The translations under genes were made by a program, and so were the position numbers. From the IMG/VR virus record IMGVR_UViG_3300032046_000001, positions 124,001 through 188,000 of that record: DNA of 64,000 nucleotides. One strand, written 5' to 3'. Shown here piece by piece: positions 1,211 to 55,936 of the stretch. The notes beneath the pieces were generated by a model. That model was not told the origin of the DNA. It ran no database searches and saw only the letters and a program-made list of their open reading frames with translations. Within the stretch, counting starts at the first letter, position 1. Each line of letters starts with the position of its first letter.

Positions 1211-1816
1211 ATGAAAATTTATGAAAATTTAGATTTACAAGATTTAGATGTAGAAGTTTGGAGAACTATAAAAGAATACCCAGATTATTCTATTAGTAAT
1301 TTAGGAAGGGTTAAATCATTAAAATTTGGAAAAGAAAGAGTATTAAAACAAGGTAAAAATAGTAGAAAATATTTTTGTGTTGTTTTATCTAAAAATAAAA
1401 ATAAAAAAACAAAATTAGTTCATATACTTGTTTTTGAAATTTATAATAATTACAAATTAAAATCAAATGAGTGTATTCATCACAAAGATGGGAATAAAGA
1501 AAATAATTATTATAAAAATTTAGAAAGAATGACTAAATTAGATCACTTAAGTTTACACAACAAAGGAGAAAACAATCCTATGTTTGGAAAATATTTATCT
1601 ACAAAAACAAAAATGATGATAAGTAAAAATCATTTCGATAATAAAGGTGAAAATAATCCACATCATAAACTAACAGAAGAACAAGTTATCCAGATAAAAT
1701 TATTATTAAAAGAGGGAATATTAACTCAAGAAGAAATAGCTGATATATTTGGAGTTGGTAAAATGACAATTTCAAAAATAAAGAGAGGAAAATTATGGAA
1801 ACATGTGAAAATATGA
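1211..1816 (+). mobile_element. NUMOD4-HNH homing endonuclease with C-terminal HTH
   Basis: VWRTIKEYPDYSISNLGRVKS (NUMOD4), IHHKDGNKENN (HNH), KLTEEQVIQIKLLL...TQEEIADIFGV HTH; ATG 1211 follows GGAG (track ORF starts 1190). Confidence 0.88.
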
Positions 1817-2475
1817 AAAGTGATATGTCAATAAAAGCAATTGAGTGTTTTTCAACCTATCAAGGAGAAGGGTTATTTTCAGGAAAAAGAGTTGTATTAA
1901 TAAGATTCAAAGAATGTAATCGTGATTGTTGGTATTGTGATACAAAAAATAAAATGAAATATTATGAGGAAGGTGAATATAAATTAGAAGATATTCAAAA
2001 ATTGATAGATGTTGAATGTGCCAATCTTCTCATAACAGGTGGTGAAGTAACATTTGATAAAAATTTTCATCAAACAATATTATTATCAAATAAATTAAAA
2101 TATTCCGAGATGTATATTGAAACAAATGGTTATAAATTAGAGGAACTTTATCAATATGTAAAAAATAATAAAAATATTTATTTTGTCTATTCGCCAAAGA
2201 TCTTCAATGATAAAGATCTATTTAGTGACCCAACTGATGTCTTTATGAACTTGATTGGTAGAAATTTAATTATAAAAGTTTTATATGATGGAACTAATCC
2301 CTTTGTGGAAAAATATTTAAATAAGATTACTAAATACAGAGACAGTGTTTATTTACAACCTATGGGTTCAACCAAAGAAGATATTATTAAGAATATGAAA
2401 GTTGTTCTTGAGGCTGCGGATAAATATAAGTTTAATATTTCAAGTAGATTACATCTAATTCATGATTTCAGATAG
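1813..2475 (+). CDS. queE: 7-carboxy-7-deazaguanine synthase-like radical SAM protein
   Basis: FSTYQGEG, IRFKECNRDCWYCDT (CxxxCxxC), LITGGE, IETNG, SPK, YLQP, RLH; ATGA overlap with the upstream gene. Confidence 0.85.
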   Translation: MKSDMSIKAIECFSTYQGEGLFSGKRVVLIRFKECNRDCWYCDTKNKMKYYEEGEYKLEDIQKLIDVECANLLITGGEVTFDKNFHQTILLSNKLKYSEMYIETNGYKLEELYQYVKNNKNIYFVYSPKIFNDKDLFSDPTDVFMNLIGRNLIIKVLYDGTNPFVEKYLNKITKYRDSVYLQPMGSTKEDIIKNMKVVLEAADKYKFNISSRLHLIHDFR

Positions 2476-2484
2476 GAAAAGATT

Positions 2485-2676
2485 ATGTACAATGAACAAT
2501 CAGTATGCGACGGTTTGACTATTTATGAAAACTGTAAAGGTGAATGGCCGAATCCTCAGAAATTTAAAATTAAGATTGAATCAGGAATATGTGACATATG
2601 TAATGAAGAAAAAGAAATATTAGTATTTCTTGGAAATAATATATGTGTGGAGTGTATTAAAAAGGATAGTATATGA
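2485..2676 (+). CDS. Small Cys-rich hypothetical protein
   Basis: 63-aa ORF after GGAAAAG, two CxxC pairs, ATGA-coupled to the next frame. Confidence 0.55.
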   Translation: MYNEQSVCDGLTIYENCKGEWPNPQKFKIKIESGICDICNEEKEILVFLGNNICVECIKKDSI

Positions 2677-2829
2677 AATTTGAATTAACTTGTGATATAA
2701 ACTTTGAAGCTGATGATAAATACAACGCATTTTTTATTGAGTAATCATTTCAAATGTTTATATGAAGATGAAGACGATTTATATTTAGAATTTAATGGTG
2801 ATATAAATTTAAAACGGATTGATATATGA
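2673..2829 (+). pseudogene. Frameshifted small ORF
   Basis: ATG 2673 overlaps the previous stop. The frame stops after 23 codons, but a shift at the T6 run (2730-35) continues to TGA 2827-29, which overlaps the purM ATG. Confidence 0.5.
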
Positions 2830-3917
2830 ACTATAAAGATTCTGGTGTGGACACTAAATTAGAAACTATCGGATTAGACATTTTTATTGATAATATAAAA
2901 CAATCATTCAACAATATTCCATCAGGAGTTGGTAAAGTTTTTGATGATATTGGTTATTTCGCCAATGTCATCAATCTTACTAATGATATGAGTTTAGTTG
3001 TGTCAGCCGATGGAGTTGGAACTAAAGTTTTAATTGCCCAAATGATGAATAAATATGACACAATCGGAATTGATTGTATTGCCATGAATATAAATGATAT
3101 TATTTGTCTTGGTGCAAAACCTATCAGTTTTTTGGACTATATTGCCCTACAATCACCACAACTTGAGTTGATGGAACAACTATCTGAGGGACTATTAAAA
3201 GGTGCTCAGATGGTAGGTATAACGATTCCTGGTGGTGAAACAGCACAAGTACGAGATCTTATTAAAGGTGTTCGAAATAATTTTGGTTTTGATATAGCTG
3301 GTTTTGGTATTGGTATGGTTAATCCTGAGAAAATAATTAATGGAAGTGATATTAAAATTGGAGATTCTATAATCGGAATTGAAAGTAGCGGATTACATTC
3401 TAATGGTTATTCGTTAGCACGTAAAGTTTTACTCGACTCTAACAAATATACAGTAGATAGTTATATTCCAGAACTTCAAATGACTCTTGGTGAGGAACTT
3501 TTAAAACCAACAATTATATATTCATCAATGGTTAATGAAATATTACATGAAGATATTGATGTTAAGGCACTCATAAATATTACTGGTGATGGTATGATGA
3601 ATATGGTGAGAGTCAAGAGAGATAATATTCGATTTGCGATTGATTATCTACCAGATCCACCACCTATATTTAAATTAATTCAAAAGGAAGGAAATGTTTC
3701 AGATGCTGAGATGTATAATATTTTCAATATGGGAATTGGATTTGTAACAGTTGTTAGTCACGAAGATGAAGAAAAAATAAAAGACACTATAAGTCGATTT
3801 GACTTAAAGTGTTGGAAAATTGGAAGAATTGAAAAAGCGGATATAAAGAAAGTCAATATTTTCCCCAAAAGATTGATTGGATATCGAAGAGAATTAAATG
3901 AATGGGAAGATTTTTAA
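2826..3917 (+). CDS. purM: Phosphoribosylformylglycinamidine cyclo-ligase (AIR synthetase)
   Basis: YKDSGVD, SADGVGTK, IGIDCIAMNINDI, FLDYIA, GGETA, SSGLHSNGYSL, LLKPT, NITGDG, FNMGIG. Confidence 0.95.
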   Translation: MNYKDSGVDTKLETIGLDIFIDNIKQSFNNIPSGVGKVFDDIGYFANVINLTNDMSLVVSADGVGTKVLIAQMMNKYDTIGIDCIAMNINDIICLGAKPISFLDYIALQSPQLELMEQLSEGLLKGAQMVGITIPGGETAQVRDLIKGVRNNFGFDIAGFGIGMVNPEKIINGSDIKIGDSIIGIESSGLHSNGYSLARKVLLDSNKYTVDSYIPELQMTLGEELLKPTIIYSSMVNEILHEDIDVKALINITGDGMMNMVRVKRDNIRFAIDYLPDPPPIFKLIQKEGNVSDAEMYNIFNMGIGFVTVVSHEDEEKIKDTISRFDLKCWKIGRIEKADIKKVNIFPKRLIGYRRELNEWEDF

Positions 3918-3938: not shown

Positions 3939-4226
3939 ATGAGAACATTAGAAGCAGTAAAAGACAAAATTATAGTAGAGTTGGACATCCCTCTTGAGAG
4001 TAAGACAGAATCTGGTCTTTTCATTCCAGAGACAGCAGTAAACGAACCACAGAAATATGGCAAGGTTGTCTCAATAGGTGAAGAGGTTTCTTATAGAGAC
4101 AAGTTGAATATTGGTGATATTATATCTTTTCATGGACGTGCTGGTCAGGATATAATCTTAAACCGTAAGATTTTCAAGGTGCTTCTTGAAGGTGAAGTTT
4201 ATGGAATCATAAAGGAAACTAATTAA
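3939..4226 (+). CDS. groES: Co-chaperonin GroES
   Basis: 95 aa; DKIIVE, KTESGLFIPETA mobile loop, G.VVSIGE, GDII.F; SD AAGGAG. Confidence 0.9.
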   Translation: MRTLEAVKDKIIVELDIPLESKTESGLFIPETAVNEPQKYGKVVSIGEEVSYRDKLNIGDIISFHGRAGQDIILNRKIFKVLLEGEVYGIIKETN

Positions 4227-4534
4227 TGAAAGAACTAACAACTGACAATTTTAATACAATTAAGTCAGGAGTTTCTATTGTAGATTTTTGGTCGGAGTTC
4301 TGTATGCAGTGTGTAGCACTGCAACGGACTCTCGATCAATTAGAAAAACAGTATACCCAAGTTAATTTTTATTCAGCTAATGTTGGACATTTATCTGACT
4401 TGGCTGGAGATTTAAATATAACAGCACTACCTACGATAATTTTCTTAAAAGATGGTGAAGAAAAACTACGAATTTTTGGAAACAGACCCCAAAAATATAT
4501 TGAAGATGAAATTAAAAAATTATTAGGAGAATAA
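4226..4534 (+). CDS. Thioredoxin
   Basis: VDFWSEFCMQC (CxxC), ITALPTIIFLKDGEE. Confidence 0.88.
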   Translation: MKELTTDNFNTIKSGVSIVDFWSEFCMQCVALQRTLDQLEKQYTQVNFYSANVGHLSDLAGDLNITALPTIIFLKDGEEKLRIFGNRPQKYIEDEIKKLLGE

Positions 4535-4535
4535 A

Positions 4536-5051
4536 ATGAGACGAACAATACTTATTAACGGTTCTGGTGGAACTGGAAAAGATGAACTTGTAAAGATGGC
4601 AAAAGATATTTTGGACATTCCTGTTTATAATATCTCATCTATTACACCTGTTATGGAAATGGCCAAACTTATGGGATGGGATGGAACAAAAGACGACAAG
4701 TCACGAAAACTTTTAAGTGATTTGAAAGATCTTTGGATCGAATTTAATAACGGTCCAATTAATAAACTGATTCAAACAATCGATGAAATTGATGATCAGT
4801 ACAATCCTCCAGATCCATATCTCATTTTCATTCATATTCGTGAACCATATGAAATTGAAAAGTTTAAGAGTAACTATCCAGATACAGCTACCGTTATGGT
4901 AAAAAGAAGTAAAACTACAAAATACAATAATGATAGTGATCAATTTGCAGATGAATACGCATATGACTATATAATTGAAAATGATGGGACACTAAACGAA
5001 CTGAAAGATGCAGTTGAAGTACTACTTAAAGATCTGAATATTTTAAAGTAG
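4536..5051 (+). CDS. P-loop kinase, dNMP-kinase-like
   Basis: INGSGGTGKD Walker A; C-terminal YDYIIENDGTLNELK typical of phage nucleotide kinases. Confidence 0.6.
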   Translation: MRRTILINGSGGTGKDELVKMAKDILDIPVYNISSITPVMEMAKLMGWDGTKDDKSRKLLSDLKDLWIEFNNGPINKLIQTIDEIDDQYNPPDPYLIFIHIREPYEIEKFKSNYPDTATVMVKRSKTTKYNNDSDQFADEYAYDYIIENDGTLNELKDAVEVLLKDLNILK

Positions 5052-12067: not shown

Positions 12068-12676
12068 ATGAAAATATTTGAAAATTTGGATTTAAAAGAT
12101 TTAGAAAATGAAATATGGAAAAATATTTTAGATTATGAAAATAATTATCAAATTAGTAATTCAGGACGAATTAAATCATTAAAATTTGGAAAAGAAAAAA
12201 TATTAAAACAGATCAAAGATAATTATAATTATTTTTTTATCAATTTGTGTAAAAATGGAAAATCTAAAATAAAATATATTCATCATCTTGTTTATGAAAC
12301 TTTCAAAGGAAAATTAGAAGAAGGTTATGATGCTCATCATATAAATGAAAATAAAGAAGATAATTTTGTTGGTAATTTAGAATCTAAACCACATAACGAA
12401 CATTCTAGTTTTCATAATAAAAATAAAATAGTTTCAGAAGAAACAAAAAAGAAAATATCTAAAAGTGGAAAAGGAAGAGCGGTTACAGAAGAAACAAGAA
12501 TTAAAATTAAAGGAAAAAATAATCCAAATTACAAAATAACAAATCAAAAAATTATTGATATCAGGATTGACATAGAAAAAAAATTAAGTCAAAGAAAAAT
12601 TGCTAATAAATACGATGTTAGTCAAACAACAGTTTCTAGTATAAAAACTGGAAAAGTTAGGGAGTTATATGAATAA
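12068..12676 (+). mobile_element. NUMOD4-HNH homing endonuclease
   Basis: IWKNILDYENNYQISNSGRIKS, AHHINENKEDN, C-terminal HTH (SQRKIANKYDVSQTTV). Confidence 0.88.
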
Positions 12677-16537: not shown

Positions 16538-16921
16538 TTAGTCAATGTCATTTTCTACATAAGACATAATTTGTTGTATCGTTATATTGTGTATCACCAT
16601 CATCTCCAATATCTCATCTTTATCTGGATGATCATATTGTAATGCACGTTTTAGTTGAGATGTATACTGAATATCCCAACATAGATCAAAATCATATGGA
16701 AGAAGTGGATCTGTTGGATTGGGAAAATCGTATAAATCATTTCTTAATTGCCAAGTACTAAATTCTTCAAGATTTACACAGCGACTATTTTTCAATGTTT
16801 CATCAACATATGAAACAGTTTTTTCAGTTCCATCCCAGTGGTATGTTCTGACGATACTCCCATCTGGTCGTTCATATAAAGCACCGAGAACAACACCACC
16901 AACTCTGACAGTAATAGACAT
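16538..16921 (-). CDS. Hypothetical protein
   Basis: 127 aa, SD AAGGAAG, overlaps the coaB-like stop by 1 nt. Confidence 0.65.
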   Translation of the reverse strand: MSITVRVGGVVLGALYERPDGSIVRTYHWDGTEKTVSYVDETLKNSRCVNLEEFSTWQLRNDLYDFPNPTDPLLPYDFDLCWDIQYTSQLKRALQYDHPDKDEILEMMVIHNITIQQIMSYVENDID

Positions 16922-17673
16922 TATTCTTCCTTTCTATGTAATAATTCTTGATTGATTAAGTCATACAGAGTAGAATTTAGAGTGTCTCTATTCACATCAG
17001 CAATAGAACCATTTTTTGAAATTATAACTGCTCTTTGACTATACCACTCAAGACAATTAGCAACAATAAAATCGGCATCCGATTGTCTCATACTTTTAAG
17101 AGCTATATCAATAAGTTGTTGATCTGATTTCTGACTTTCAAGTTTAAACTTAACAAGAATTCCTTTAAAACCCCATTCAGTTTTAATAAGATCAACAATC
17201 TTTGGAAGAGGAACTAATTTCAAATATAATTCTTTTCTTCCTGATTTAATCTTTGGTTCATTAATTGGCCACATCATTGGATTACCAGTATCATCATAAC
17301 CCATTTCATAAGCACCATCAACACCATAATCACTAACGGCTGCTGAATGAATTATAACATCATATTGAAATGGTGTTTCTCCGGTCATAACAGGTTGATC
17401 GGCCAATTCGCGTTGAATACTATCCTTTAATTCATCAAATGTTCTATATTGAATAACATTGATATCTATGTAATCCCATTCAAGTGATCGAATGCTTTCT
17501 TCTGCATATTCAATTAATGGTCTGGAATTTAAAAGAGTAACAACAGCACCCTGTTCAAGAAAGTATTTTGCAATCTTAGTACCAGACTTACCAGTGAATA
17601 TATTACTTATTCTTCTTACGTTGTCAATACGGGAACAAGTACTACCTCCCGTTATCAGCGTTCGTATTCTCAC
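16921..17673 (-). CDS. coaB: Phosphopantothenate-cysteine ligase (CoaB domain)
   Basis: LITGGST..IDNVRRISNIFTGKSG, HSAAVSDY, PKI, LVKFKLE, DFIVAN. Confidence 0.85.
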   Translation of the reverse strand: MRIRTLITGGSTCSRIDNVRRISNIFTGKSGTKIAKYFLEQGAVVTLLNSRPLIEYAEESIRSLEWDYIDINVIQYRTFDELKDSIQRELADQPVMTGETPFQYDVIIHSAAVSDYGVDGAYEMGYDDTGNPMMWPINEPKIKSGRKELYLKLVPLPKIVDLIKTEWGFKGILVKFKLESQKSDQQLIDIALKSMRQSDADFIVANCLEWYSQRAVIISKNGSIADVNRDTLNSTLYDLINQELLHRKEE

Positions 17674-33700: not shown

Positions 33701-33997
33701 ATGAATACAGAATTAATTAGAGAAATAAAAGAAAATGTTTATAAGATACTGGAATTATTTATTGGTACAGAATTAGTAGTAGGTGATTCATTAGATAATT
33801 ATTATATGACTTATAGAAAAGCCATCATGGATGAACTCTATAAATACAAAAATGAATTTAGTGAAACAACAAATGACGACTATATTGATTTTAAATATAA
33901 AATTGATTTTACTGTTGGTAAAAATAGAATTATAGAAGATATAACAGTAGTGTTTCAAGCACCGGAATGTATTGCTGATTATGAGGAGATTGAATAG
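33701..33997 (+). CDS. Hypothetical protein
   Basis: 98 aa, SD AAGGA. Confidence 0.6.
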   Translation: MNTELIREIKENVYKILELFIGTELVVGDSLDNYYMTYRKAIMDELYKYKNEFSETTNDDYIDFKYKIDFTVGKNRIIEDITVVFQAPECIADYEEIE

Positions 33998-34497
33998 TGA
34001 GTTTTGATGAAATCGTTGATAGAGTTGTAAAAACATTTGATATAAGACCACGAACCAGGGTTTTTCTTGGAGGAACTTGTGGTAATTCAACTTGGAGAAA
34101 TGAAATTATTCCAAAGTTACAAGTTGATTATTTTAATCCAGTTGTAGAAGACTGGACGCTTGAATGTCAAAAACAAGAAGAAGAAGAAAAAAAAATATGC
34201 AGTATTCATCTTTATATTATCACTAAAGAAATTACAGGCTATTATTCAATAGCCGAAATAGTTGATGCATCGAATAAATTTACTAACTGTGATTATGAAT
34301 CAAAATATCCATATAAAACAATTATATATTGTTTTCTTCCAGAAGGTATGACAAAACATCAAATTAAATCATTAGAATTAATTGGTGAAATGGTTGGAGG
34401 TAATGGAGCGATTTGGTTAAAAAATTTAGACGAGGTTGTTGATTATATCAATATATTTACCAATGGAGAATTTTATGAAAGGGATGATATATATTGA
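33997..34497 (+). CDS. Nucleoside 2-deoxyribosyltransferase-like protein
   Basis: VFLGGTCGNSTWR..YFNPVVEDW...YSIAEIVD pattern. Confidence 0.65.
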   Translation: MSFDEIVDRVVKTFDIRPRTRVFLGGTCGNSTWRNEIIPKLQVDYFNPVVEDWTLECQKQEEEEKKICSIHLYIITKEITGYYSIAEIVDASNKFTNCDYESKYPYKTIIYCFLPEGMTKHQIKSLELIGEMVGGNGAIWLKNLDEVVDYINIFTNGEFYERDDIY

Positions 34498-36684: not shown

Positions 36685-36689
36685 CATAT

Positions 36690-37494: not shown

Positions 37495-37510
37495 ACTCGA
37501 AAGGAAAATA

Positions 37511-38927: not shown

Positions 38928-39659
38928 CTATTTATGTCCAACAACCTTATCATAATCTACCCGTTTTTGATAGATACAATCAAGTTCCTTGATCAGTATC
39001 TCTTTGATTATTTTCAAATCACCTAATCTTAAATAAACATCATCAAATTGGCCATCATTTAATAAATGGTCAATAGTTGAGTTTATAATAATAACTGGAT
39101 CTAAATTCTCAGGTTGAGACTGTGATATCGATCTCGATTTTGCTTCAGTGATATCACACATCATTAAAATCGCAGCCTCAAGACTTTGAGGTTTCATCAT
39201 CTTATATCTAAAAGTAGAACTATCAGTTGTTTGTGATTTATCAAAAAAATATTTAACAATTGTCGATCCATGATGTTGTGAGACAATATCGATAATATCA
39301 CGAGAAAAATTTCTATTGTTTAAGAGTATTAAAGCACCATCTGATACATGCCTTGTTATTATTTGATAACTAATAGTTGGTTCTAATGTATCATGAATAT
39401 TTTCACCTTCCGCTTGATTCTCACTGAAGTATTTTGGATTAAATAATTTTCCAATATCGTGATATAAAGCGCAAACTTTCATGAATATTGCGTGTAGTCC
39501 TAAACTAGATCCAACACTTTCAACCATTGTCATTACAGCTTGGGAATGTTTAAATGATCCAGGACAAGCCTCTTTAAACATAGTTAATAAACGATTTTGT
39601 GGATCTAATAATGAACTCAAATCAGATTCAGATTGTTGAATTTTCAAATATTTAAACAT
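38928..39659 (-). CDS. HD-domain phosphohydrolase resembling the cytoplasmic domain of PgpH/YqfF
   Basis: PGSFKHS, ALYHDIGKLFNPKYFSENQ, QIITRHV, VSQHHGSTIVKYFF, FRY...P.S.EAAILMMCD; no TM region. Confidence 0.8.
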   Translation of the reverse strand: MFKYLKIQQSESDLSSLLDPQNRLLTMFKEACPGSFKHSQAVMTMVESVGSSLGLHAIFMKVCALYHDIGKLFNPKYFSENQAEGENIHDTLEPTISYQIITRHVSDGALILLNNRNFSRDIIDIVSQHHGSTIVKYFFDKSQTTDSSTFRYKMMKPQSLEAAILMMCDITEAKSRSISQSQPENLDPVIIINSTIDHLLNDGQFDDVYLRLGDLKIIKEILIKELDCIYQKRVDYDKVVGHK

Positions 39660-41918: not shown

Positions 41919-41933
41919 TTTTAAGTCCACCTC

Positions 41934-48647: not shown

Positions 48648-49241
48648 ATGAAAATTTATAAAAATTTAAATTTACAGGATTTAAATGGTGAAATCTGGAA
48701 AGTTATAGAAAATTTTCCAGATTATCAAGTTAGTAGTTATGGAAGAGTTAAATCACTAAAATGTAGAAAAGAATTAATAATTAAACAACATATAGATTCT
48801 AAAGGATATTTGCGTACATCTATATATAAAAAAGGTAAAAAAGTTCATAGACTAGTTTATGAAACATTTAAAGAAAAATTAAATATAGATTATGATATCC
48901 ATCATATAAATGAAAATAAAGAAGATAATAATATTAATAATTTGGAGAAAAAATCTCATATTTTACATTCAATTAATCACAATCCTAAAGGCAATAATCA
49001 TAAAAATTATGGCAAACATCATTCTGAAGAATCAAAGATTAAAATAGGTAAAAATCATGTTGATATTCGTGGAATTAATAATCCAAGTAGTATATTATTA
49101 ATTCAAGAAATTATTCAAATTAAATTATTATTAAAAGAAAAAATATTATCTCAAAAAGAAATAGCAGAAATATTTGAAGTTCATCCAATGACTATATCAT
49201 CTATTAAAAATAAAAGAACTTGGTCATATATAATAATATAA
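48648..49241 (+). mobile_element. NUMOD4-HNH homing endonuclease inserted against the local strand
   Basis: IWKVIENFPDYQVSSYGRVKS, IHHINENKEDNNINNL, C-terminal HTH. Confidence 0.88.
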
Positions 49242-49248: not shown

Positions 49249-49284
49249 AAAGAAACACCATCATTAATCTGATGGTGTTTCTTT
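49249..49284. terminator. 15-bp hairpin at convergent junction
   Basis: AAAGAAACACCATCA-TTAATC-TGATGGTGTTTCTTT. Confidence 0.7.
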
Positions 49285-50334
49285 CTCTTTAACTTCTTTC
49301 ATTTCAACAATATCACCAATTATTTCAATACGTTTTTCATCTCGCTCTTCAGGAGTACCAAACCAAGTCAGCTCCCAGAAAATTGCCTTCATCGTTTCCA
49401 AAACTTTAAATTGTTTGTTTCCAAAATACTGTTTATCATGAAAATCATCAGAAGAGTAAATTTTGAAAACATTTTTCAATCTTAATTTCAATGTTTTCAA
49501 ATAATTATTTGGAGTGAAACTTATACCATAGTAAATAAGACCATTCAGTCCCTCTGGGAGATAATCATCTTCACATGGTTCACCAATAGCATGAAAAGAT
49601 GGCCATGATGTCAAAGTTTCATATTCAGCATCATGTTCAACATCCCAATATATTTCGAGATATTTCAATTCTCCAGAACCACTGAATTCTTTTTTAGATT
49701 CTTCTATTATCGGTTTGATTCTTTCACCAGTAATAATCTCCCAAAGATCAATATTGTTTTCAACAATATCAAATATTCTTCCAAGAGTAACATCATCATT
49801 TAATCTTACATTCTCCCATATGAAATGAATCAACTTATCAGGAGCAATAATTTGTTCTTGTCTGCCTGCTTTCCAATAAGAACGAATTATTGAATTATTG
49901 GTTATTATGATACCTTCAAAATCATCTTCCTCTTCTTTCTCTGAAAAGATATGATATTTTTCATTTAAGCGTTTATCGAGTTCGGTTTTCCACTCTTTCT
50001 CAGTCCATCCATGATCAAGAAGAGTCTCATTCCACTTTCTCCACTGTTTTTTAGGTTGTTTAAAATCAGGACATAGAAGAATCATTTCCGATAACTCATC
50101 AAATATATTAGAAATCTCTTCATATGGTGTACGGACTTCTATACTATCTTTTGGTGGTATTTTAATAGAAACTGGAAATTCAAATGCCTCACCAAAAACA
50201 AGATCATTAACAGCTTTAAATTGAACTGACTTATTATATTGATTTCCCAAAAATTTTAAAATTCCATCATAATCATCGTGTGCAAAATGTATAACATACT
50301 CGCCATTTGGGTCATATATTTTGGTAAAAATCAT
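49264..50334 (-). CDS. Hypothetical protein
   Basis: 356-aa ORF, no motif recognised. Confidence 0.75.
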   Translation of the reverse strand: MIFTKIYDPNGEYVIHFAHDDYDGILKFLGNQYNKSVQFKAVNDLVFGEAFEFPVSIKIPPKDSIEVRTPYEEISNIFDELSEMILLCPDFKQPKKQWRKWNETLLDHGWTEKEWKTELDKRLNEKYHIFSEKEEEDDFEGIIITNNSIIRSYWKAGRQEQIIAPDKLIHFIWENVRLNDDVTLGRIFDIVENNIDLWEIITGERIKPIIEESKKEFSGSGELKYLEIYWDVEHDAEYETLTSWPSFHAIGEPCEDDYLPEGLNGLIYYGISFTPNNYLKTLKLRLKNVFKIYSSDDFHDKQYFGNKQFKVLETMKAIFWELTWFGTPEERDEKRIEIIGDIVEMKEVKEKETPSD

Positions 50335-50338
50335 TTTA

Positions 50339-50539
50339 TTATTTCTCCTTTATTATATCAGGAGATACTTCTATACCATACCATTCAATACAACTCGGAC
50401 AAACAAGAATATGATTTTTATCCGAATAAGTTAAATCACTTTCATCTCCAACCCAACCACATTCAGGACATTTATATTTTCCAGAACATATCTCATCATC
50501 ATCAAAATCATTATAATGGTGATTTCCAAATAATGCCAT
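50339..50539 (-). CDS. Small zinc-ribbon protein
   Basis: CPECGW...CPSC; SD GAGG. Confidence 0.6.
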   Translation of the reverse strand: MALFGNHHYNDFDDDEICSGKYKCPECGWVGDESDLTYSDKNHILVCPSCIEWYGIEVSPDIIKEK

Positions 50540-50556
50540 ATTTTAATTCCTCTTTC

Positions 50557-52002
50557 TTAAACTAAATGGTGACATTCTTTTTTAGACATAATAATTTTCA
50601 GTTCTTCATACGATACTGGTTTGAAATTATTATTATCAACTCCAACATCGTAGGACTTTCCTAATGACGGAAGTTCTCCATGTGAATTGCCCACTATTAT
50701 ATGTTTTCCATTTCTTCTAATAACTATAGTTTTATTTTTAACCTTAACACACCAAAAATGTTCATTATTTACAGTCTCAATAAAAACTTTATTTTTTAAA
50801 TTATCGTGTGTTCTACACGATCGTTTAGTTACTACCAATTCATAATTAATTTTTTTTGCAAAACCACCGCGTCGTTCAGAAATATTACACATGTATTCAT
50901 TTCTTATACATGCTGTTTGTATTAAATCTGCTTCTATTTTTTTAGATGTGTATATTAAAATTGAAGTTTTATTTTTATAACCATCTGTATGAGTATATTC
51001 TTCTAATATTATATCTAATTGATTTTGATTTGAATCAATAATTATATCACTAATAGGTTTTAATCTAATATTATAAAAATAATCTGGTTTATGAAAATTA
51101 AAACAAATTGAATCATCTTTCTGTTTATTTCTGCTATAATTAATATTCAATTTTTTTAATAAATTTTCTATTCTGTTAATTTTTCTTGTTTTAAAAACTC
51201 TAATTCTTATTAAATCAGTATTACATAAATTACCATCTGCCGCTATCCAAACTAATAACTTAATTTGGTCATTGTTTAAATTAATTCCAGTTTGATTGCC
51301 AATTGCAGATTTTTTAAATTTTCTTTTATTGATTTTAAAAATTTCATCCGTATAAAATTTTCTAAATTCCTCTTTTTTTCTTCCTATTAAAATATCAATC
51401 AATATATGATTTGGTGTTAATCTTAAATCTAACCCCTTTGATTTTATATTATACACATCACCTGTATGATTATAATCTATAATTTCGTCTATTTCATTAT
51501 ATTCTAATTTTTTATTTTCAATATTTAAAGTTAATATTTTATGACCATATAATAATTCACTTCTTTTTTTCCAACCGTTATCTGTTAAAATTTCTGTTTC
51601 ATCATCTAAACAATGGGCATATAGTTCCCATGCTCCATGATGAGAACAATTCCAAACTCTCATCGCATAATGACACAGAGTTATTTTTTGTTGTCCAATC
51701 CTAATATCATGAAGATTGTGAACTTCTTTACAATATTCTTTAATTGTATTTATAAATCGAAAATCATGATTCCCAAGGATGAATATTTTTTGACCATTCA
51801 TTTTACTAAGTGCAGTTATTGCACCTTCCTTGGTCATCGCAATATCACCTAAATAATAAACAGTGTCTTTTGTCCTAACGATTGAATTATGGTTATCCAA
51901 AAGACACTGTTGTTGTTCGTACTCATTTTTAAAAGGCCGATTGCAGTACCTCAATATATTATAATGAAGATTGTGCCAATCAGCAGTAAAGAAAATATTC
52001 AT
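50557..52002 (-). CDS. Calcineurin-like metallophosphoesterase interrupted by an intein
   Basis: DWH, LGD, GNHD, HY, AH|SH motifs; spliced product about 172 aa. Confidence 0.88.
   Translation of the reverse strand: MNIFFTADWHNLHYNILRYCNRPFKNEYEQQQCLLDNHNSIVRTKDTVYYLGDIAMTKEGAITALSKMNGQKIFILGNHDFRFINTIKEYCKEVHNLHDIRIGQQKITLCHYAMRVWNCSHHGAWELYAHCLDDETEILTDNGWKKRSELLYGHKILTLNIENKKLEYNEIDEIIDYNHTGDVYNIKSKGLDLRLTPNHILIDILIGRKKEEFRKFYTDEIFKINKRKFKKSAIGNQTGINLNNDQIKLLVWIAADGNLCNTDLIRIRVFKTRKINRIENLLKKLNINYSRNKQKDDSICFNFHKPDYFYNIRLKPISDIIIDSNQNQLDIILEEYTHTDGYKNKTSILIYTSKKIEADLIQTACIRNEYMCNISERRGGFAKKINYELVVTKRSCRTHDNLKNKVFIETVNNEHFWCVKVKNKTIVIRRNGKHIIVGNSHGELPSLGKSYDVGVDNNNFKPVSYEELKIIMSKKECHHLV
50686..51612 (-). 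mobile_element. 309-aa intein with LAGLIDADG-like domain, ending Gly-Asn
   Basis: Starts CLDDETEILTDNGWK; LTPNH block B; WIAADG and THTDG; ends FWCVKV..RRNGKHIIVGN, +1 Ser. Confidence 0.9.
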
Positions 52003-52012
52003 TTTATCTTAT

Positions 52013-52318
52013 CTACACCTTCTTATTTTTAATATCACGTAATGTAAATCCAAGTATATTAACAATCTTAACAACTCTTGGTTCAAGTTTTGATTGTTCA
52101 TCAAAAAACCCGAAATCTTTTCCACATTTTAAACATGTATACGAAACAGGATAATTAACATCTGTTCGTTCGAATGGTTCTGCAACAAATTTTGATAATT
52201 CTGGATGATTACAAGATTCTTGAACTTTCTCTTTTGCCTTCAGTAATTTTCTTTTACACTCTTTTTTAAGATCCTTAAATTCTTTTACAGCCATATCAAA
52301 TTTATTTGTGTCTAACAT
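52013..52318 (-). CDS. Hypothetical protein
   Basis: 101 aa, CNH...CLKC. Confidence 0.6.
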   Translation of the reverse strand: MLDTNKFDMAVKEFKDLKKECKRKLLKAKEKVQESCNHPELSKFVAEPFERTDVNYPVSYTCLKCGKDFGFFDEQSKLEPRVVKIVNILGFTLRDIKNKKV

Positions 52319-52948
52319 TCATTCCTCCACTGGACGAAAATGTCCGTCATGTTTTTTAATATATCTAAAAGTATCGAGTGGTACACCAACAATATTCTCA
52401 CCATTATTGTATTGTTTTCGATATTTCAAACGATAATAAAACGTACTCATAATTTTCGCCATTTTATCAGATAAATATCTTTTACTAACTATTATATCAT
52501 CAATATAACCAAAAGTTACACCAATCAAATCAACGATACATTCATTGGCGACAAATATATCTGATCTATTATTAATCGAATCAAACGGAATAAAGAATGG
52601 TGCCTTTTTTAACAACAAATGGCAAAGTTCGTGAACAACATTACCTCTCAATTCCTGATCGGTTGCTTTTTCCCATATATCGGCATTGTAGAAGATATGA
52701 ATTTTATCATCTACTATGGAATTACAAATGGCCGAGATATCCACCTTAATGGGTCTTCCATGAATAGTAAATTTTTTACTGATATTAGGTGTATTGTGAA
52801 ATCTGAAAATGATAAGTTTAAACTCTTCTTCTATATAAAGTGAAGACATAACCGCTGGAATTATTTTTAATAATCGTTGTTTGAGATTCAATTTAACATC
52901 CCTTTCTGAAAGAAAATTTTTATAATATAAAAATGACATCTCTGTCAT
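52319..52948 (-). CDS. Hypothetical protein with HExxH motif
   Basis: NVVHELCH; possible zincin-like metalloprotease. Confidence 0.55.
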   Translation of the reverse strand: MTEMSFLYYKNFLSERDVKLNLKQRLLKIIPAVMSSLYIEEEFKLIIFRFHNTPNISKKFTIHGRPIKVDISAICNSIVDDKIHIFYNADIWEKATDQELRGNVVHELCHLLLKKAPFFIPFDSINNRSDIFVANECIVDLIGVTFGYIDDIIVSKRYLSDKMAKIMSTFYYRLKYRKQYNNGENIVGVPLDTFRYIKKHDGHFRPVEE

Positions 52949-52951
52949 AAC

Positions 52952-53134
52952 GAAAATAGAAAAGGAGAAAATTCAAGTCATCACAAATTGACAGAACGAG
53001 ATGTTATTCAAATAAAATTATTATTAAAAGAAGGAAAGTTAACTCAAAAAGAAATAGCCGATATGTTTGGGGTTTCAGTATATACGATTTCAGATATAAA
53101 AAGAGAAATAACTTGGTATCATATAAAAATTTAA
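52952..53134 (+). pseudogene. Orphan C-terminal HTH of a homing endonuclease (not in ORF track)
   Basis: KGENSSHHKLTERDVIQIKLLLKEGKLTQKEIADMFGV...TWYHIKI*; in-frame stop at 52934-36, no nuclease domain upstream. Confidence 0.75.
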
Positions 53135-54330
53135 TTACCTACTATAACACCTATTGGAAATAATTTAACCACTGGTTCTATTAAATCAGATTGATCTTCA
53201 ATTACTTTATCAATATTTTTATATACTGCCGGAGCTTCGTCGAGTGGAATCTGATTTGTCCAAATTCTCTCCATTGATTTTTCCACTAATTCTCTATTTA
53301 AAGTTTTATTAGCCTCTCTTCTTCCTAATACTCTACCAGCACCATGCGATGATGTTTCAAAACTCTCTTTATTTCCCAGTCCACGCACGATATAACTTGC
53401 TGTTCCCATAGACCCTGGTATAACACTTAGTTGATCTTTTCGAGCTGCTGTCGCTCCCTTACGATGCACAACAACATCCTTTCCAAAATGCCTTTCAAAT
53501 GCTACATAGTTATGATGAATATTAATCTCTTGTTGAACTGAACAAGCTAACATTCCACAAGTAATAGACGTAAATATATTCATCATTCTTCTTCTATTTT
53601 CAAAGGCAAATTTTAAAGCGAAATTCATCAATTCATAATACGCCTTACCTTCTTTAGTTTCAATTGGTAAATATGCCAAATTTGGATCTGGTAACTGAAT
53701 ATGATATATATTCATTAAGTGTGTTGCTTGATGATGAAATTCATTACATATTTGATAACCAAGATTACGACTACCGGAATGAATCATCAACCATATATAA
53801 CCATCTTCACCTTTTAACATTTCAATAAAATGGTTTCCAGACCCTAAAGTTCCTAATTGATATCTTGATTCATTCAATGCTGACTGAATATAAGTTGGAA
53901 ATTCTGGGTGATCTTCAAAACCGTCCCATGTTTGTGGAAGAGTATGACCAATTCCTTTGCCATGTGGAACAACCCGACATGTTTCACTCATGATTCTATC
54001 AATCTGTTCTGATATGATATTTTCTGATTTGAAATCGGTTTGAACTGCAATTATACCACATGCTATATCACTACCAACTCCATAAGGAAATATAATATTC
54101 TCAGTGGCTGCAACACCACCGATGGGAAAACCATAACCACAGTGTGCATCCGCTGATAAAACTCCCCATTTATAAATAAATGGAAAACTACAGATATTAC
54201 CCATCTGCTGTAGTGCTGAATTCTCAACATCTTCACACCAAGACTTGATTGGAACATGAAGATTTTGTGCAATCTCTCTTTCCGCAATTCCTCTAAATAA
54301 ACTTGACTCTTTAGATAATACCCATTTCAT
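53131..54330 (-). CDS. rtcB: RNA 3'-phosphate ligase RtcB
   Basis: DAHCGYGFPIG, DIACG, GTLGSGNHFIE, HSGSR, HHNY, HRKGAT, PGSMGT, SHGAGR, DEAPAVYK. Confidence 0.95.
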   Translation of the reverse strand: MKWVLSKESSLFRGIAEREIAQNLHVPIKSWCEDVENSALQQMGNICSFPFIYKWGVLSADAHCGYGFPIGGVAATENIIFPYGVGSDIACGIIAVQTDFKSENIISEQIDRIMSETCRVVPHGKGIGHTLPQTWDGFEDHPEFPTYIQSALNESRYQLGTLGSGNHFIEMLKGEDGYIWLMIHSGSRNLGYQICNEFHHQATHLMNIYHIQLPDPNLAYLPIETKEGKAYYELMNFALKFAFENRRRMMNIFTSITCGMLACSVQQEINIHHNYVAFERHFGKDVVVHRKGATAARKDQLSVIPGSMGTASYIVRGLGNKESFETSSHGAGRVLGRREANKTLNRELVEKSMERIWTNQIPLDEAPAVYKNIDKVIEDQSDLIEPVVKLFPIGVIVGN

Positions 54331-54902
54331 ATATGTCCCTCAATTTTCATTGTAGTCAATTTAACATTTTTGGCATGATAGTAATATTCTGGTGAAATAA
54401 AACCTCTTGATTTTTGTATATCGATGTATATATGTTTGTTAATAAATTCTGAACCATAATCATCAATTTTATCTCCATCAATATTTTTTATTTTTAATTT
54501 CTTCTTTCCCTGAGATAAAATATGATCTTCTGTAGCTTGAAAAATCTCATCTTTTCTATAATCTTGTTCCATCAAATCTATTAAATAACACGCCCTTAAA
54601 ATATAAATTTTATTTTTCTGTATAATAGGAAATGCGTCTCTAACATCACACAGCCATATTTCATATCTAATTCTCCCTGGAAATTTATATCTCCATGATG
54701 TTAAAACGTGTCTAAGTTCGACTTCAATATTATACAAGTCTTCTTCACGATCAATTTTATAAATGAAAGCTGGTCTTTTTGACCACTTATTTGGTTCATA
54801 TATTTGACACAATTGGTGTCCGAGAGGTAATACAGATGATGTTCTTCTATCACCTTTTATAGAATCATCATATTCGAGAACAACTGCTTTAATAAACATC
54901 AT
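54327..54902 (-). CDS. Hypothetical protein
   Basis: 191 aa, coupled on both sides. Confidence 0.65.
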   Translation of the reverse strand: MMFIKAVVLEYDDSIKGDRRTSSVLPLGHQLCQIYEPNKWSKRPAFIYKIDREEDLYNIEVELRHVLTSWRYKFPGRIRYEIWLCDVRDAFPIIQKNKIYILRACYLIDLMEQDYRKDEIFQATEDHILSQGKKKLKIKNIDGDKIDDYGSEFINKHIYIDIQKSRGFISPEYYYHAKNVKLTTMKIEGHI

Positions 54903-55936
54903 GACCTCCTAAATATTCCGATATCACCATAAAGTGATTCAAACTCTTCTCTTGTATATAGAGATTTTTTATCCAATCCAAAAAAATCAAATCGGATATT
55001 TAGTCTATTCTCAATACAATTAATATACTCAAATGTTTCTTCAGAAACTTCTCTGTCGATATAATCAACATGATTCATTACAAATCTTGTTGGTCTATTT
55101 ACTATAATCGATTTTCTAGCAACTCCATAATCAAAACATCCAGCAATTCTTCTAATCCTATTAGTAACAGACGTATATTCAATAACTTGTCTTGATAACT
55201 GTTTTGATAACTCATCCCATGTTGTTTCTAAAAATAGTGGACCTGAATTACCACCAACTCTTATAGGATATGATCTGAAAACCATTACTATATCATCAAC
55301 ATCGAGTGGGCTTAAACCAGCTTCAGACACAAAACCAGCCGCTGAAGTATCACGAGAAGTAACAAACGGATAATGTTGTGAATGAAGAAGTGATAATCCG
55401 AATCCTTGGGTTCCCTCAATAATAATTCTATTTCCCATATCGAGTTGTATTCTCATGAAACGTTGAGATTCTCGAATATAATCATATAATAAAGGTTCAT
55501 CTCCAGCTAAACGTACTTTATCACGACCAATACGTCTAATCACAGCTTCACCAGTTCCACTACAAGTAGAACCTATTTTGCAACCTAATAATTTTTCTTT
55601 TTCATTATTGACATCTTCATCAGATATTAACATGGCATTTGGATCTATTATTAATCGATTTATTGAAATACCTGTTAATTCAATTTCTTTGAATAATAAT
55701 TTTAAATTGATATAACTTCCAGCAGGTAATACACAATTAATACGAGAAGTAATAGCAGATACGGGAAGTTGTCTCAATATAATAGATTCACCAGAATTAT
55801 TAATTATTGTATGTCCAGAATTTGGACCACCAACTCTAACAACAGTAGAGACGTTCTTGTCAAATGATAAATAGTAAGTTACTTTGCCTTTGCCTTCAGA
55901 ACCATATTGACCACCAACTATAACTGTAACTGGCAT
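54899..55936 (-). CDS. Adenylosuccinate-synthetase-family protein with PurZ/PurZ0 signature
   Basis: GGQYGSEGKG (Ser13 where PurA has Asp13), GPNSGHT, EGTQGF, YPFVTSRD, PIRVGGNSG, SVTNRIRR, NHVD. Confidence 0.75.
   Translation of the reverse strand: MPVTVIVGGQYGSEGKGKVTYYLSFDKNVSTVVRVGGPNSGHTIINNSGESIILRQLPVSAITSRINCVLPAGSYINLKLLFKEIELTGISINRLIIDPNAMLISDEDVNNEKEKLLGCKIGSTCSGTGEAVIRRIGRDKVRLAGDEPLLYDYIRESQRFMRIQLDMGNRIIIEGTQGFGLSLLHSQHYPFVTSRDTSAAGFVSEAGLSPLDVDDIVMVFRSYPIRVGGNSGPLFLETTWDELSKQLSRQVIEYTSVTNRIRRIAGCFDYGVARKSIIVNRPTRFVMNHVDYIDREVSEETFEYINCIENRLNIRFDFFGLDKKSLYTREEFESLYGDIGIFRRS

What the first reader, a model, noticed from the sequence alone, without database searches (positions are those of the whole stretch)
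1813..55936. Possible co-occurrence of adenine (PurZ-like) and guanine (DpdA/QueE) modification pathways in one genome
Seen: both gene sets occur in this window, together with PurM, a dNMP-kinase-like protein and a deoxyribosyltransferase-like protein. Inference: both purines might be modified, which I do not recall being demonstrated in a single phage. The two pathways could also interact because PurZ consumes dGMP.
Basis: inference. Interest (0 to 1): 0.7.

Follow-up and report, generated by a model that had tools for sequence, protein, structure and literature searches.

The report
PurZ-like gene, but no DpdA
This 312-kb sediment jumbo phage carries an unusual PurZ-type enzyme that could make the adenine substitute 2-aminoadenine, but it lacks the enzyme needed to put modified guanine into DNA, so modification of both purines is not supported.

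Summary
The window is bases 124001-188000 of a complete 312,420-bp jumbo myophage with terminal repeats (28.6% GC, sediment or soil).

**Adenine side: real but atypical.**
- The PurA-family gene at 54899-55936(-) has Ser in place of the catalytic Asp13. [quoted passage not shown]
- The rest of the catalytic set is intact, and the gene is under purifying selection.
- It belongs to neither the PurZ nor the PurZ0 clade. It nests inside a large, apparently undescribed bacterial family of short Ser/Gly-type PurA paralogues (at least 580 species).
- In bacteria this paralogue sits in a conserved operon with a dCTP-deaminase/dUTPase-fold protein, an exonuclease-kinase fusion and often a deoxynucleoside-kinase-like protein.
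- The phage has none of those partners, and no DatZ, MazZ, DutZ/DmtZ, PolA/DpoZ or PurB.

**Guanine side: fails.**
- The radical-SAM gene at 1795-2475(+) is a full-length QueE homologue with its key residues intact.
- A leave-one-out-controlled DpdA profile finds nothing in the whole genome. QueC, QueD and FolE are absent too.

PurM, a dNMP-kinase-like protein and a deoxyribosyltransferase-like protein are present.

**Verdict:** Dual purine modification is not supported. Synthesis of 2-aminoadenine nucleotides is plausible but unproven.

The parts
54899..55936 (-). PurZ-like (Ser-type) adenylosuccinate-synthetase homologue, 345 aa
   Evidence: Pfam PF00709. The N-terminus reads GGQYGSEGKGK, with Ser13 at the PurA Asp13 site. 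Y11, S13 and T255 match PurZ F12, S14 and T262. dN/dS 0.18-0.19. AF2 model pLDDT 84 with the PurA/PurZ fold.
1795..2475 (+). QueE-like radical-SAM protein, 226 aa
   Evidence: phrog_2076 1.7e-29. Own phage-QueE HMM 4.2e-21. The EcQueE residues Q13, E15, R27, C31, C35, C38 and T40 are conserved as Q23, E25, R37, C41, C45, C48 and T50 (alignment; residue roles from PMC11142719). dN/dS 0.12.
2826..3917 (+). PurM (AIR synthetase), 363 aa
   Evidence: TIGR00878 342.4 bits, cut-off 236. Its position next to the QueE-like gene is conserved in relatives L011 and L012.
4536..5051 (+). dNMP-kinase-like P-loop protein, 171 aa
   Evidence: phrog_139 'deoxynucleoside monophosphate kinase' 2.5e-11. Weak Pfam Guanylate_kin hit, E 0.001.
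33997..34497 (+). Nucleoside 2-deoxyribosyltransferase-like protein, 166 aa, inside a glycosyltransferase cluster
   Evidence: PF15891 6.5e-08. Atlas viral PF15891 clusters, TM 0.75. No similarity to the DmtZ half of a PurZ0-phage fusion protein.
38928..39659 (-). HD (HDIG-type) phosphohydrolase, 243 aa; not a DatZ homologue
   Evidence: Pfam HD 7.3e-13 and TIGR00277 HDIG. No hit to phiVC8 or S-2L DatZ.
54327..54902 (-). 191-aa ORF of unknown function; its start overlaps the end of the PurZ-like gene
   Evidence: No family hits. The order PurZ-like, 190-aa ORF, RtcB is kept in relative L101 but not in L013.
53131..54330 (-). RtcB RNA ligase (a neighbour, probably unrelated to purine chemistry)
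   Evidence: Pfam RtcB 2.9e-103.
56248..57104 (-). Two paralogous small ORFs (149 and 136 aa) upstream of the PurZ-like gene
   Evidence: No family hits. Equivalent 134-148-aa ORF pairs precede the gene in L013 and L101.
2..1075 (+). C-terminal part of the family-B DNA polymerase, the only replicative polymerase found
   Evidence: Pfam DNA_pol_B 4.9e-20. No PolA/DpoZ in the genome. The full ORF at genome 121812-125072 aligns over its whole length with a relative's UDG-PolB fusion.

Best explanation
The phage encodes one purine-altering enzyme, not two pathways.

**PurZ-like enzyme (54899-55936, minus strand)**
- It is a catalytically intact, Ser-type PurA paralogue that a jumbo-phage lineage captured from a widespread bacterial Ser/Gly-type family.
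- By analogy with PurZ and PurZ0, it most likely condenses aspartate with a guanine nucleotide rather than with IMP. The substrate is probably dGMP, but this was not shown.
- The phosphate donor is probably GTP, because the PurA Asp333 equivalent is retained. The product would be N6-succino-2-amino-(d)AMP.
- Host PurB would then release 2-amino-(d)AMP. The phage dNMP-kinase-like protein, or host kinases, would raise it to the triphosphate. The phage family-B polymerase could then incorporate it.
- No dATP- or dGTP-clearing enzyme is present, so substitution of A by Z would be partial, unless unknown analogues of those enzymes exist.

**QueE-like gene (1795-2475)**
- It is a separate, conserved gene of the replication module. 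It probably still acts on a CPH4-like pterin.
- Without DpdA, QueC, QueD and FolE it cannot modify the guanine of DNA by any known route.

**What is shown and what is inferred**
- Shown: family membership, signature residues, phylogenetic position, absence of partner genes and purifying selection.
- Inferred: the substrate, the product, and any Z in virion DNA.
For: **Signature residues**
- Ser13, Tyr11 and Thr255 align with PurZ S14, F12 and T262; E. coli PurA has D, W and G there. The roles of these residues come from bioRxiv 10.1101/2025.10.22.683976.
- Ser replaces Asp13 in 100% of 147 phage PurZ/PurZ0 sequences, and Asp13 is 99% conserved in PurA (PMC12884076).
- The catalytic residues K16, N38, H41, T129, R143, Q224 and R305 are retained.

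**Selection and conservation**
- dN/dS is 0.18-0.19.
- The gene is conserved at 68-98% identity in related contigs.

**Origin in a bacterial family**
- In the tree, the window protein and six relatives form a 100/100 clade inside the bacterial Ser/Gly family.
- In bacteria the paralogue sits beside deoxynucleotide enzymes: a DCD/dUTPase-fold protein in 76 of 80 loci, an exonuclease-kinase fusion in 68 of 80, and a dNK-like protein in 37 of 80.
- All five bacterial genomes tested also carry a canonical PurA elsewhere.

**Solo copies in other large phages**
- Solo Ser-type copies occur in other large phage records that lack DatZ and MazZ.

**QueE-like gene**
- Its functional residues are conserved.
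- DpdA, QueC, QueD and FolE are absent by controlled searches.
Against: - No biochemical or DNA-composition data exist. Only assembled contigs are available, so the reads carry no modification signal.
- The enzyme scores below NCBIfam's PurZ cut-off (227.8 against 300) and slightly higher on an archaeal-type PurA model.
- Its nearest solved relatives by sequence and fold are P. horikoshii PurA and PurZ0, about equally.
- DatZ, MazZ, DutZ, DmtZ, DpoZ and PurB are all absent. The genome's Dut looks ordinary.
- In E. coli, an incomplete Z-cluster gave lower substitution (PMC8342488).
- The function of the bacterial parent family is unknown.
- Whether the substrate is the deoxy or the ribo form is not resolved. 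The window enzyme keeps the R303 equivalent, which by my recollection contacts the 2'-OH of IMP in PurA.
Confidence: 0.5

Rival explanations
1. Dual modification. PurZ-like chemistry replaces A with Z, and a DpdA/QueE pathway replaces G with a 7-deazaguanine in the same genome.
For: - A QueE homologue with intact substrate-binding, cluster and Mg residues lies in the replication module.
- A distant syntenic relative also carries a genuine QueC.
Against: - No DpdA is found with a nine-member profile. That profile finds every left-out DpdA at E <= 3e-21, but its best genome hit is E = 0.53.
- No QueC, QueD or FolE is found in a genome with terminal repeats rated 100% complete.
Confidence: 0.04
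2. The PurZ-like enzyme manipulates nucleotide pools or counters a host defence, rather than building Z-DNA. It could drain or divert (d)GMP. Alternatively it could mimic or interfere with the host's Ser/Gly-type PurA operon, if that operon is an antiviral system.
For: - The gene was acquired from the bacterial family without any of its operon partners.
- The bacterial operon has variable flanks and a phylogeny that does not follow taxonomy, as mobile defence modules do.
- Its first gene weakly resembles the kinase part of the anti-phage dCTP deaminase.
- PurA enzymes are dimers that share R143 across subunits (my knowledge). Mixed dimers are therefore conceivable.
Against: - Nothing tested here shows that the bacterial operon is a defence system. 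PADLOC and NCBIfam have no model for it.
- The phage enzyme keeps all catalytic residues, so it is more likely an enzyme than a decoy.
Confidence: 0.2
3. It is an ordinary auxiliary PurA that boosts AMP synthesis together with PurM.
For: - A genuine PurM is encoded.
- The best NCBIfam hit is an archaeal-type PurA model, and the best solved match by sequence and fold is P. horikoshii PurA.
- The guanine-specific Asp333 equivalent is retained.
Against: - The catalytic base Asp13, 99% conserved in PurA, is Ser.
- All PurA equivalog cut-offs are missed.
- All 75 bacterial relatives that could be scored carry Ser or Gly at that site. All five host genomes tested keep a separate canonical PurA.
Confidence: 0.1
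4. The QueE-like and PurZ-like genes belong to one pre-replicative 7-deazapurine nucleotide route, following the logic of toyocamycin biosynthesis. In that route a Ser-type PurA homologue would aminate a 2-amino-7-deazapurine nucleotide.
For: - In another T4-like phage of about 235 kb, FolE, a weak QueE-like gene and a Ser-type PurA homologue lie in one co-directional gene array.
- The window's genome also encodes a phosphoribosyltransferase.
- That toyocamycin clusters combine FolE/QueD/QueE/QueC with PurA- and PurB-like enzymes is my own knowledge, not tested here.
Against: - The window's genome lacks FolE, QueD and QueC.
- The two genes lie 52 kb apart, on opposite strands.
- Three complete or near-complete phage records with Ser-type PurA homologues have no QueE-like gene.
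- The other phage's array also holds unrelated genes: dCMP deaminase, a 5'-3' exonuclease and Acb1.
Confidence: 0.05

Closest known systems
PurZ0 of actinophages (e.g. Gordonia phage Archimedes, PDB 7VF6; Arthrobacter phage Beethoven gp48)
   Same: - Compact PurA fold (TM 0.81).
- Ser at the Asp13 site and F/Y at the preceding aromatic position.
- Thr at the T262 site, and a T-x-(R/K)-(I/V)-R-R aspartate loop.

   Different: - Only 37-41% identity, and a separate clade.
- PurZ0 phages always carry DutZ and usually DmtZ (PMC12884076). Here the Dut is closer to E. coli Dut and the NDT-like protein is unrelated to DmtZ.
- There is no DpoZ-type PolA.
- The host phage is a 312-kb myophage, not a siphophage of about 44 kb.
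PurZ of phiVC8 and S-2L (PDB 6FM1, 7ODX; NCBIfam NF038379)
   Same: [quoted passage not shown]
   Different: - It scores under the family cut-off (227.8 against 300).
- The ATP-stacking F295 is His, and the PurA-like Asp (D333 equivalent) is kept where PurZ has N or Q.
- There is no DatZ or MazZ.
Archaeal-type short PurA (Pyrococcus horikoshii, PDB 5K7X/2D7U; NF003295)
   Same: Best sequence and fold match (2.4e-46; TM 0.84), the same compact architecture, and the GTP-type Asp retained.
   Different: PurA has GDEGKG and G-T-V-T-G-R-R-R-R. The window protein has GSEGKG and T-S-V-T-N-R-I-R-R. It scores under the family cut-off (255.7 against 368).
Phage 7-deazaguanine DNA-modification clusters (Queuovirinae, Vid5, Nipunavirus: FolE-QueD-QueE-QueC-DpdA)
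   Same: A full-length QueE homologue is present.
   Different: Those clusters are contiguous and include DpdA. This genome has QueE only.
Bacterial Ser/Gly-type PurA paralogue operon (no name found in Pfam, NCBIfam, PADLOC or the paper library)
   Same: This is the window enzyme's true family: 45-57% identity, and 474 bits on a family HMM. The Ser/Gly signature is shared.
   Different: Bacterial members sit in a three- to four-gene operon with an exonuclease-kinase fusion, a DCD/dUTPase-fold protein and a dNK-like protein. The phage copy stands alone.

Membership tests
PurZ / PurZ0 (2-amino-deoxyadenylosuccinate synthase) | PurA-family fold and catalytic core (K16, N38, H41, Q224, R305 equivalents) | tested here: met
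   Pfam PF00709; residue map; AF2 model with Foldseek TM 0.80-0.84.
PurZ / PurZ0 (2-amino-deoxyadenylosuccinate synthase) | Asp13 replaced by Ser, plus the F12 and T262 equivalents that accommodate the 2-amino group | tested here: met
   Window S13, Y11 and T255 against E. coli D, W and G. Criteria taken.
PurZ / PurZ0 (2-amino-deoxyadenylosuccinate synthase) | Scores above the curated NCBIfam PurZ cut-off (NF038379, 300 bits) | tested here: not met
   227.8 bits.
PurZ / PurZ0 (2-amino-deoxyadenylosuccinate synthase) | Falls inside the PurZ or PurZ0 clade | tested here: not met
   It nests in the bacterial Ser/Gly family; PurZ and PurZ0 lie on separate long branches. No archaeal Asp-type outgroup was available, so the deep branching is unresolved.
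PurZ / PurZ0 (2-amino-deoxyadenylosuccinate synthase) | Accompanied by DatZ + MazZ/DUF550 (PurZ) or by DutZ +/- DmtZ (PurZ0), and by a DpoZ-type PolA | tested here: not met
   - PF04447 and PF12917: no hit. The PF04447 search does find S-2L MazZ as a positive control.
- phmmer with DatZ, MazZ and DmtZ-DutZ finds only a Dut, and that Dut is closer to E. coli Dut.
- No PolA.
PurZ / PurZ0 (2-amino-deoxyadenylosuccinate synthase) | Uses dGMP + Asp to make dSMP; Z present in virion DNA | not testable with these tools
   Only assembled contigs of sediment and soil metagenomes hold the sequence.
Housekeeping PurA | Catalytic Asp13; scores above the PurA equivalog cut-offs | tested here: not met
   Ser13. 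TIGR00184 185.7 against 395.6; NF003295 255.7 against 368.
Phage DpdA 7-deazaguanine DNA-modification system | DpdA (DNA guanine transglycosylase) encoded | tested here: not met
   Wide DpdA HMM: leave-one-out recovery at E <= 3e-21, best genome hit E = 0.53. The negative Pfam TGT and PDB searches are uninformative, because both miss known phage DpdAs.
Phage DpdA 7-deazaguanine DNA-modification system | preQ0 synthesis genes FolE, QueD, QueE, QueC | tested here: not met
   Only QueE is found. The weak QueC hit is NadE, Pfam NAD_synthase 197 bits.
QueE (7-carboxy-7-deazaguanine synthase) | CxxxCxxC cluster; substrate residues Q13, E15, R27; Mg-binding T40 (EcQueE numbering) | tested here: met
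   Q23, E25, R37, C41, C45, C48 and T50 in the alignment to E. coli QueE 6NHL. Residue roles from PMC11142719.
QueE (7-carboxy-7-deazaguanine synthase) | Scores above the NCBIfam QueE equivalog cut-offs; C-terminal SAM-binding residues | tested here: not met
   The best hit, TIGR03963, scores 54.9 against 260. The C-terminal residues G94, S136 and Q189 were not aligned.
PurM (AIR synthetase) | Scores above the TIGR00878 cut-off, with both AIRS domains | tested here: met
   342.4 against 236.35; AIRS and AIRS_C.
DmtZ (NDT-like dAMP hydrolase/transferase of PurZ0 phages) | Homology to the DmtZ domain | tested here: not met
   No significant blastp or phmmer match between the window's NDT-like protein and the Beethoven DmtZ-DutZ fusion. 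It is a generic PF15891 member.

The most novel reading that the evidence does not exclude
The Ser/Gly-type short PurA paralogues form an undescribed third branch of 2-aminoadenine-type nucleotide chemistry.
- In at least 580 bacterial species they sit in a mobile operon with a DCD/dUTPase-fold protein, an exonuclease-kinase fusion and a dNK-like protein. That operon may make, or deplete, guanine-derived deoxynucleotides, possibly as an antiviral system.
- Several lineages of large phages, including this 312-kb one, captured the synthetase alone.
- Those phages may use it to put Z into DNA made by a T4-type family-B polymerase, without DatZ, MazZ or DpoZ.
Probability: 0.25. Interest if true: 0.8.

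Novelty: new variant of a known kind. Interest (0 to 1): 0.5.

Why it matters
All characterised Z-genome phages are small siphophages or podophages. They carry PurZ or PurZ0 together with dedicated dATP/dGTP-clearing enzymes, and usually a Z-selective PolA.

A PurZ-signature enzyme standing alone in jumbo myophages with a family-B polymerase raises two possibilities:
- a minimal or partial route to 2-aminoadenine, or
- a different use of the same chemistry.

The enzyme's parent family, which is far more widespread, sits in a conserved bacterial deoxynucleotide operon. That operon is directly testable as a possible new nucleotide-based defence or modification system.

For the scan itself, the result is a correction. 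The suggested first case of a phage modifying both purines is not there.

Tried and rejected
**Searches that found nothing**
- Megablast of 50000-56000 against phage genomes: no match.
- The search for related loci with the single PurZ-like protein in viral contigs: nothing. An alignment query worked.
- PADLOC and NCBIfam: no model for the PurZ-like protein or its bacterial operon partners.
- Literature searches for a bacterial PurA-like defence system, or for co-occurrence of PurZ and deazaguanine: nothing relevant.

**DpdA searches that proved uninformative**
- The Pfam TGT (PF01702) search of the genome was negative. I reject it as evidence, because the same search misses the known DpdAs of Seurat, Vid5 and PaMx25.
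- phmmer against PDB sequences also misses Seurat DpdA.
- A C-x-C-x-x-C zinc-motif scan was dropped, because those DpdAs lack the motif. The three genome ORFs that carry it have no TGT-like PDB match.
- Enlarging the DpdA profile with the search for homologous proteins gave only close relatives. I fetched diverse phage DpdAs by tblastn instead.

**Candidates ruled out**
- The weak QueC hit at genome 266 kb is NadE.
- The Atlas search of the unannotated 356-aa ORF at 49264-50334 gave no usable hit, and its model is poor.
- The HD protein as DatZ, the NDT-like protein as DmtZ, and the Dut as DutZ: none is supported.
- The ORFs next to the PurZ-like gene show no similarity to the bacterial operon partners.

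- The fold search does not separate PurA, PurZ0 and PurZ.
- Read laying was not used. Every run that holds the sequence is kept as assembled contigs only, which cannot show base modification.

Full report
**Setting.** The window is G000:C1:124001-188000 of a 312,420-bp virus record with direct terminal repeats, rated 100% complete. Its G+C content is 28.6%.
- It encodes a T4-type portal, prohead protease and gp23-like capsid protein, a DnaB helicase and a family-B polymerase.
- The capsid protein's nearest cultured relatives are the AR9/PBS1 jumbo phages, at only 24% identity.
- Near-identical sequence is held by sediment and soil metagenome runs, all kept as assembled contigs. No read-level sign of base modification can therefore be obtained.

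**Checking the observation.** Five of the six named components are present.
- The PurA homologue is at 54899-55936(-).
- The QueE-like radical-SAM gene is at 1795-2475(+).
- PurM is at 2826-3917 and scores above its equivalog cut-off.
- A dNMP-kinase-like protein is at 4536-5051.
- A PF15891 deoxyribosyltransferase-like protein is at 33997-34497.
- DpdA is not present.

**The DpdA negative needed care.**
- The Pfam TGT search of the genome was empty. As a control I ran the same search on three phages with known DpdA genes, and it was empty there too.
- A PDB sequence search also misses phage DpdA. I therefore discard both negatives.
- I built profiles from phage genes instead. A three-member Queuovirinae set of DpdA, QueC, QueD, FolE and QueE, searched with all filters off against every six-frame ORF of the genome, recovered only QueE (4.2e-21).
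- I then widened the DpdA profile to nine sequences from coliphage, Pantoea, Pseudomonas (two types), Rhizobium, Mycobacterium (two types), Microbacterium and Cellulophaga phages.
- In leave-one-out tests at the same database size, each distant member was recovered at E <= 3e-21. The best hit in the genome was E = 0.53, on a homing-endonuclease ORF.
- The one weak 'QueC' signal is an NAD synthase.
- The genome therefore has QueE but no DpdA, QueC, QueD or FolE. A transglycosylase unrelated to all known DpdA types cannot be excluded by sequence.

**The QueE-like gene is real and maintained.**
- It aligns with phage QueE proteins over 94-95% of its length.
- It keeps the E. coli QueE substrate residues Q13, E15 and R27, the three cluster cysteines and the Mg-binding Thr (alignment; residue roles from PMC11142719).
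- Its dN/dS against a relative is 0.12.
- It sits just downstream of the polymerase gene, separated from it here and in L011 by a homing endonuclease. This holds in close relatives and in a distant syntenic relative at 44% identity.
- That distant relative also carries a genuine QueC (105 bits), which the window's genome lacks.
- The lineage may once have had more of the pathway, or QueE may serve another purpose here. One possibility is to feed or perturb the host's queuosine pathway. I did not resolve this.

**The PurA homologue carries the PurZ signature.**
- Its P-loop reads GSEGKG where PurA has GDEGKG.
- Mapped on phiVC8 PurZ and E. coli PurA, it has Y11, S13 and T255 where PurZ has F12, S14 and T262, and where PurA has W, D and G. 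[quoted passage not shown]
- Ser at this site is universal in 147 phage PurZ/PurZ0 sequences, and Asp is 99% conserved in PurA.
- The remaining catalytic residues are intact, dN/dS is 0.18-0.19, and the AlphaFold model is confident.
- Unlike PurZ, it keeps the Asp that recognises guanine in PurA, and it has His where PurZ has its ATP-stacking Phe. This suggests GTP as the phosphate donor, which is an inference.

**It is neither PurZ nor PurZ0.**
- Known phage homologues are only 37-41% identical.
- Thousands of proteins from bacterial genomes are closer, at 45-57% identity.
- All 75 bacterial relatives that could be scored carry Ser (64) or Gly (11) at the Asp13 site.
- In a maximum-likelihood tree, the window protein and six relatives from related phage contigs form a 100/100 clade nested within this bacterial family. 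PurZ and PurZ0 lie on long separate branches.
- Across 80 bacterial loci the gene is flanked upstream by a protein of about 680 aa (68 of 80) and downstream by one of about 340 aa (76 of 80). A P-loop protein of about 200 aa, dNK-like, often follows (37 of 80). DNA beyond this core is not conserved.
- The upstream protein combines an MrfB-like exonuclease with an adenylate-kinase-like domain. The N-terminal half of the downstream protein is a dCTP-deaminase/dUTPase-superfamily domain.
- Five of five genomes tested also have a canonical full-length PurA elsewhere, so the Ser/Gly form is an accessory paralogue.
- I found no name for this operon in Pfam, NCBIfam, PADLOC or the paper library.
- Its company of deoxynucleotide enzymes recalls the PurZ0-DutZ pairing. 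This supports a deoxynucleotide-level role for the family, but it is circumstantial.

**The phage copy stands alone.**
- None of the bacterial partners is in the genome.
- Also absent are MazZ/DUF550 and YfbR-type DatZ by Pfam (PF04447 control), DatZ or MazZ by direct comparison, PolA, PurB and a class I/II ribonucleotide reductase.
- The genome's dUTPase resembles E. coli Dut more than DutZ.
- The NDT-like protein and the HD protein are unrelated to DmtZ and DatZ.
- A scan of IMG/VR found Ser in 79 of 80 viral PurA-like hits. Of these, 49 are PurZ0-like with a Dut/DmtZ neighbour. About 17 resemble the bacterial family and stand alone, several of them on contigs of 95-250 kb.
- Five such records have no DatZ- or MazZ-type gene, and their Pfam TGT search was also empty, which is uninformative for DpdA.
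- A further large phage also has a solo copy. Solo Ser-type synthetases in large phages are therefore a recurring arrangement.

**Are the two genes linked?**
- In one other phage of about 235 kb, FolE, a weak QueE-like gene and a Ser-type PurA homologue share one co-directional array.
- That array also holds unrelated genes.
- Three complete or near-complete phage records with the synthetase have no QueE-like gene.
- In this window the two genes are 52 kb apart, on opposite strands.
- I rate a single shared pathway as unlikely.

**Conclusion.**
- The finding's headline, two purine-modification pathways in one genome, does not hold.
- What remains is a PurZ-signature enzyme from a new, bacterially derived clade, standing alone in a jumbo myophage.
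- Its most likely product is a 2-aminoadenine nucleotide. Because partial Z-clusters gave lower substitution in E. coli, any A-to-Z replacement would probably be incomplete. Alternatively, the enzyme may serve to manipulate nucleotide pools.
- None of this is shown biochemically.

Noticed in passing
Bacterial loci L005-L007 and L020-L099 (outside the window): A conserved, apparently unnamed operon is found in at least 580 bacterial species: an MrfB-like exonuclease fused to an AdkA-like kinase (~680 aa), the Ser/Gly-type short PurA paralogue (~347 aa), a DCD/dUTPase-fold protein (~340 aa), and often a dNK-like protein (~200 aa). Its flanks vary, its phylogeny does not follow taxonomy, and a canonical PurA is present elsewhere in the five genomes tested.
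   Followed up: partly
window 39669-41930(-) and 50557-52002(-): Two intein-bearing genes. One is an RNA ligase with an OB domain, interrupted by a LAGLIDADG intein. The other is a metallophosphoesterase with a weak intein-splicing hit.
   Followed up: no
window 1190-1816, 12068-12676, 29954-30487, 48648-49241, 57503-58123 (HNH/NUMOD); 23137-23934, 33076-33687, 63446-64000 (GIY-YIG-like): There are at least eight free-standing homing-endonuclease genes in 64 kb. One lies between the polymerase gene and the QueE-like gene.
   Followed up: no
genome 121812-125072 (window 2-1075 is its C-terminal part); relatives L011:515-5128 and L102:6738-9974: In relatives, the family-B DNA polymerase carries an N-terminal Pfam UDG-superfamily domain. 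The window genome's 1087-aa ORF aligns with such a fusion over its full length (46% identity). I did not run Pfam on the window's own N-terminus.
   Followed up: partly
window 27579-38593: A cluster of glycosyltransferase genes (GT2, GT1 and GT9 types, and a 763-aa GT2-methyltransferase fusion) surrounds the NDT-like gene. It could glycosylate a surface structure or DNA; which one is unknown.
   Followed up: no
window 41934-43559(-): A Na/Pi cotransporter with PhoU domains (Pfam 4.3e-66), an unusual auxiliary phosphate-uptake gene for a phage.
   Followed up: no
window 16921-17673(-) and 18461-19195(-): The two halves of Dfp/CoaBC (the DFP domain and the Flavoprotein domain) are encoded as separate genes with another ORF between them. 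This suggests phage-encoded steps of coenzyme A biosynthesis.
   Followed up: no
window 23942-25660 and 25660-27285: Two adjacent proteins of 572 and 541 aa carry collagen triple-helix repeats. They are probably fibre proteins.
   Followed up: no
window 3939-4534: Cpn10 (GroES-like) and thioredoxin genes lie between PurM and the dNMP-kinase-like gene. The order is conserved in relatives L011 and L102.
   Followed up: no
genome 265673-266440(-), 307882-308439(-), 115559-116362(+), 286060-287040(-): Outside the window the genome encodes an NAD synthase (197 bits), a type-I phosphoribosyltransferase, a 268-aa ORF matching a relative's weakly NDT-like protein (no Pfam hit of its own), and a second radical-SAM protein (327 aa).
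   Followed up: partly
L104:9421-9999 and L104:11015-11392 (distant syntenic relative): A relative with the same order of polymerase, QueE-like gene and Cpn10 carries a true QueC, a dCMP deaminase and an NDT-like gene upstream. No TGT hit is on record for the 20 kb seen, which says little because Pfam TGT misses phage DpdA. The window's genome has lost, or never had, that QueC.
   Followed up: partly
L190:2705-12544 (a T4-like phage contig of about 235 kb): A co-directional array holds FolE, two oxidoreductases, a dCMP deaminase, a weak QueE-like ORF, a 5'-3' exonuclease, a Ser-type PurA homologue and Acb1.
   Followed up: partly
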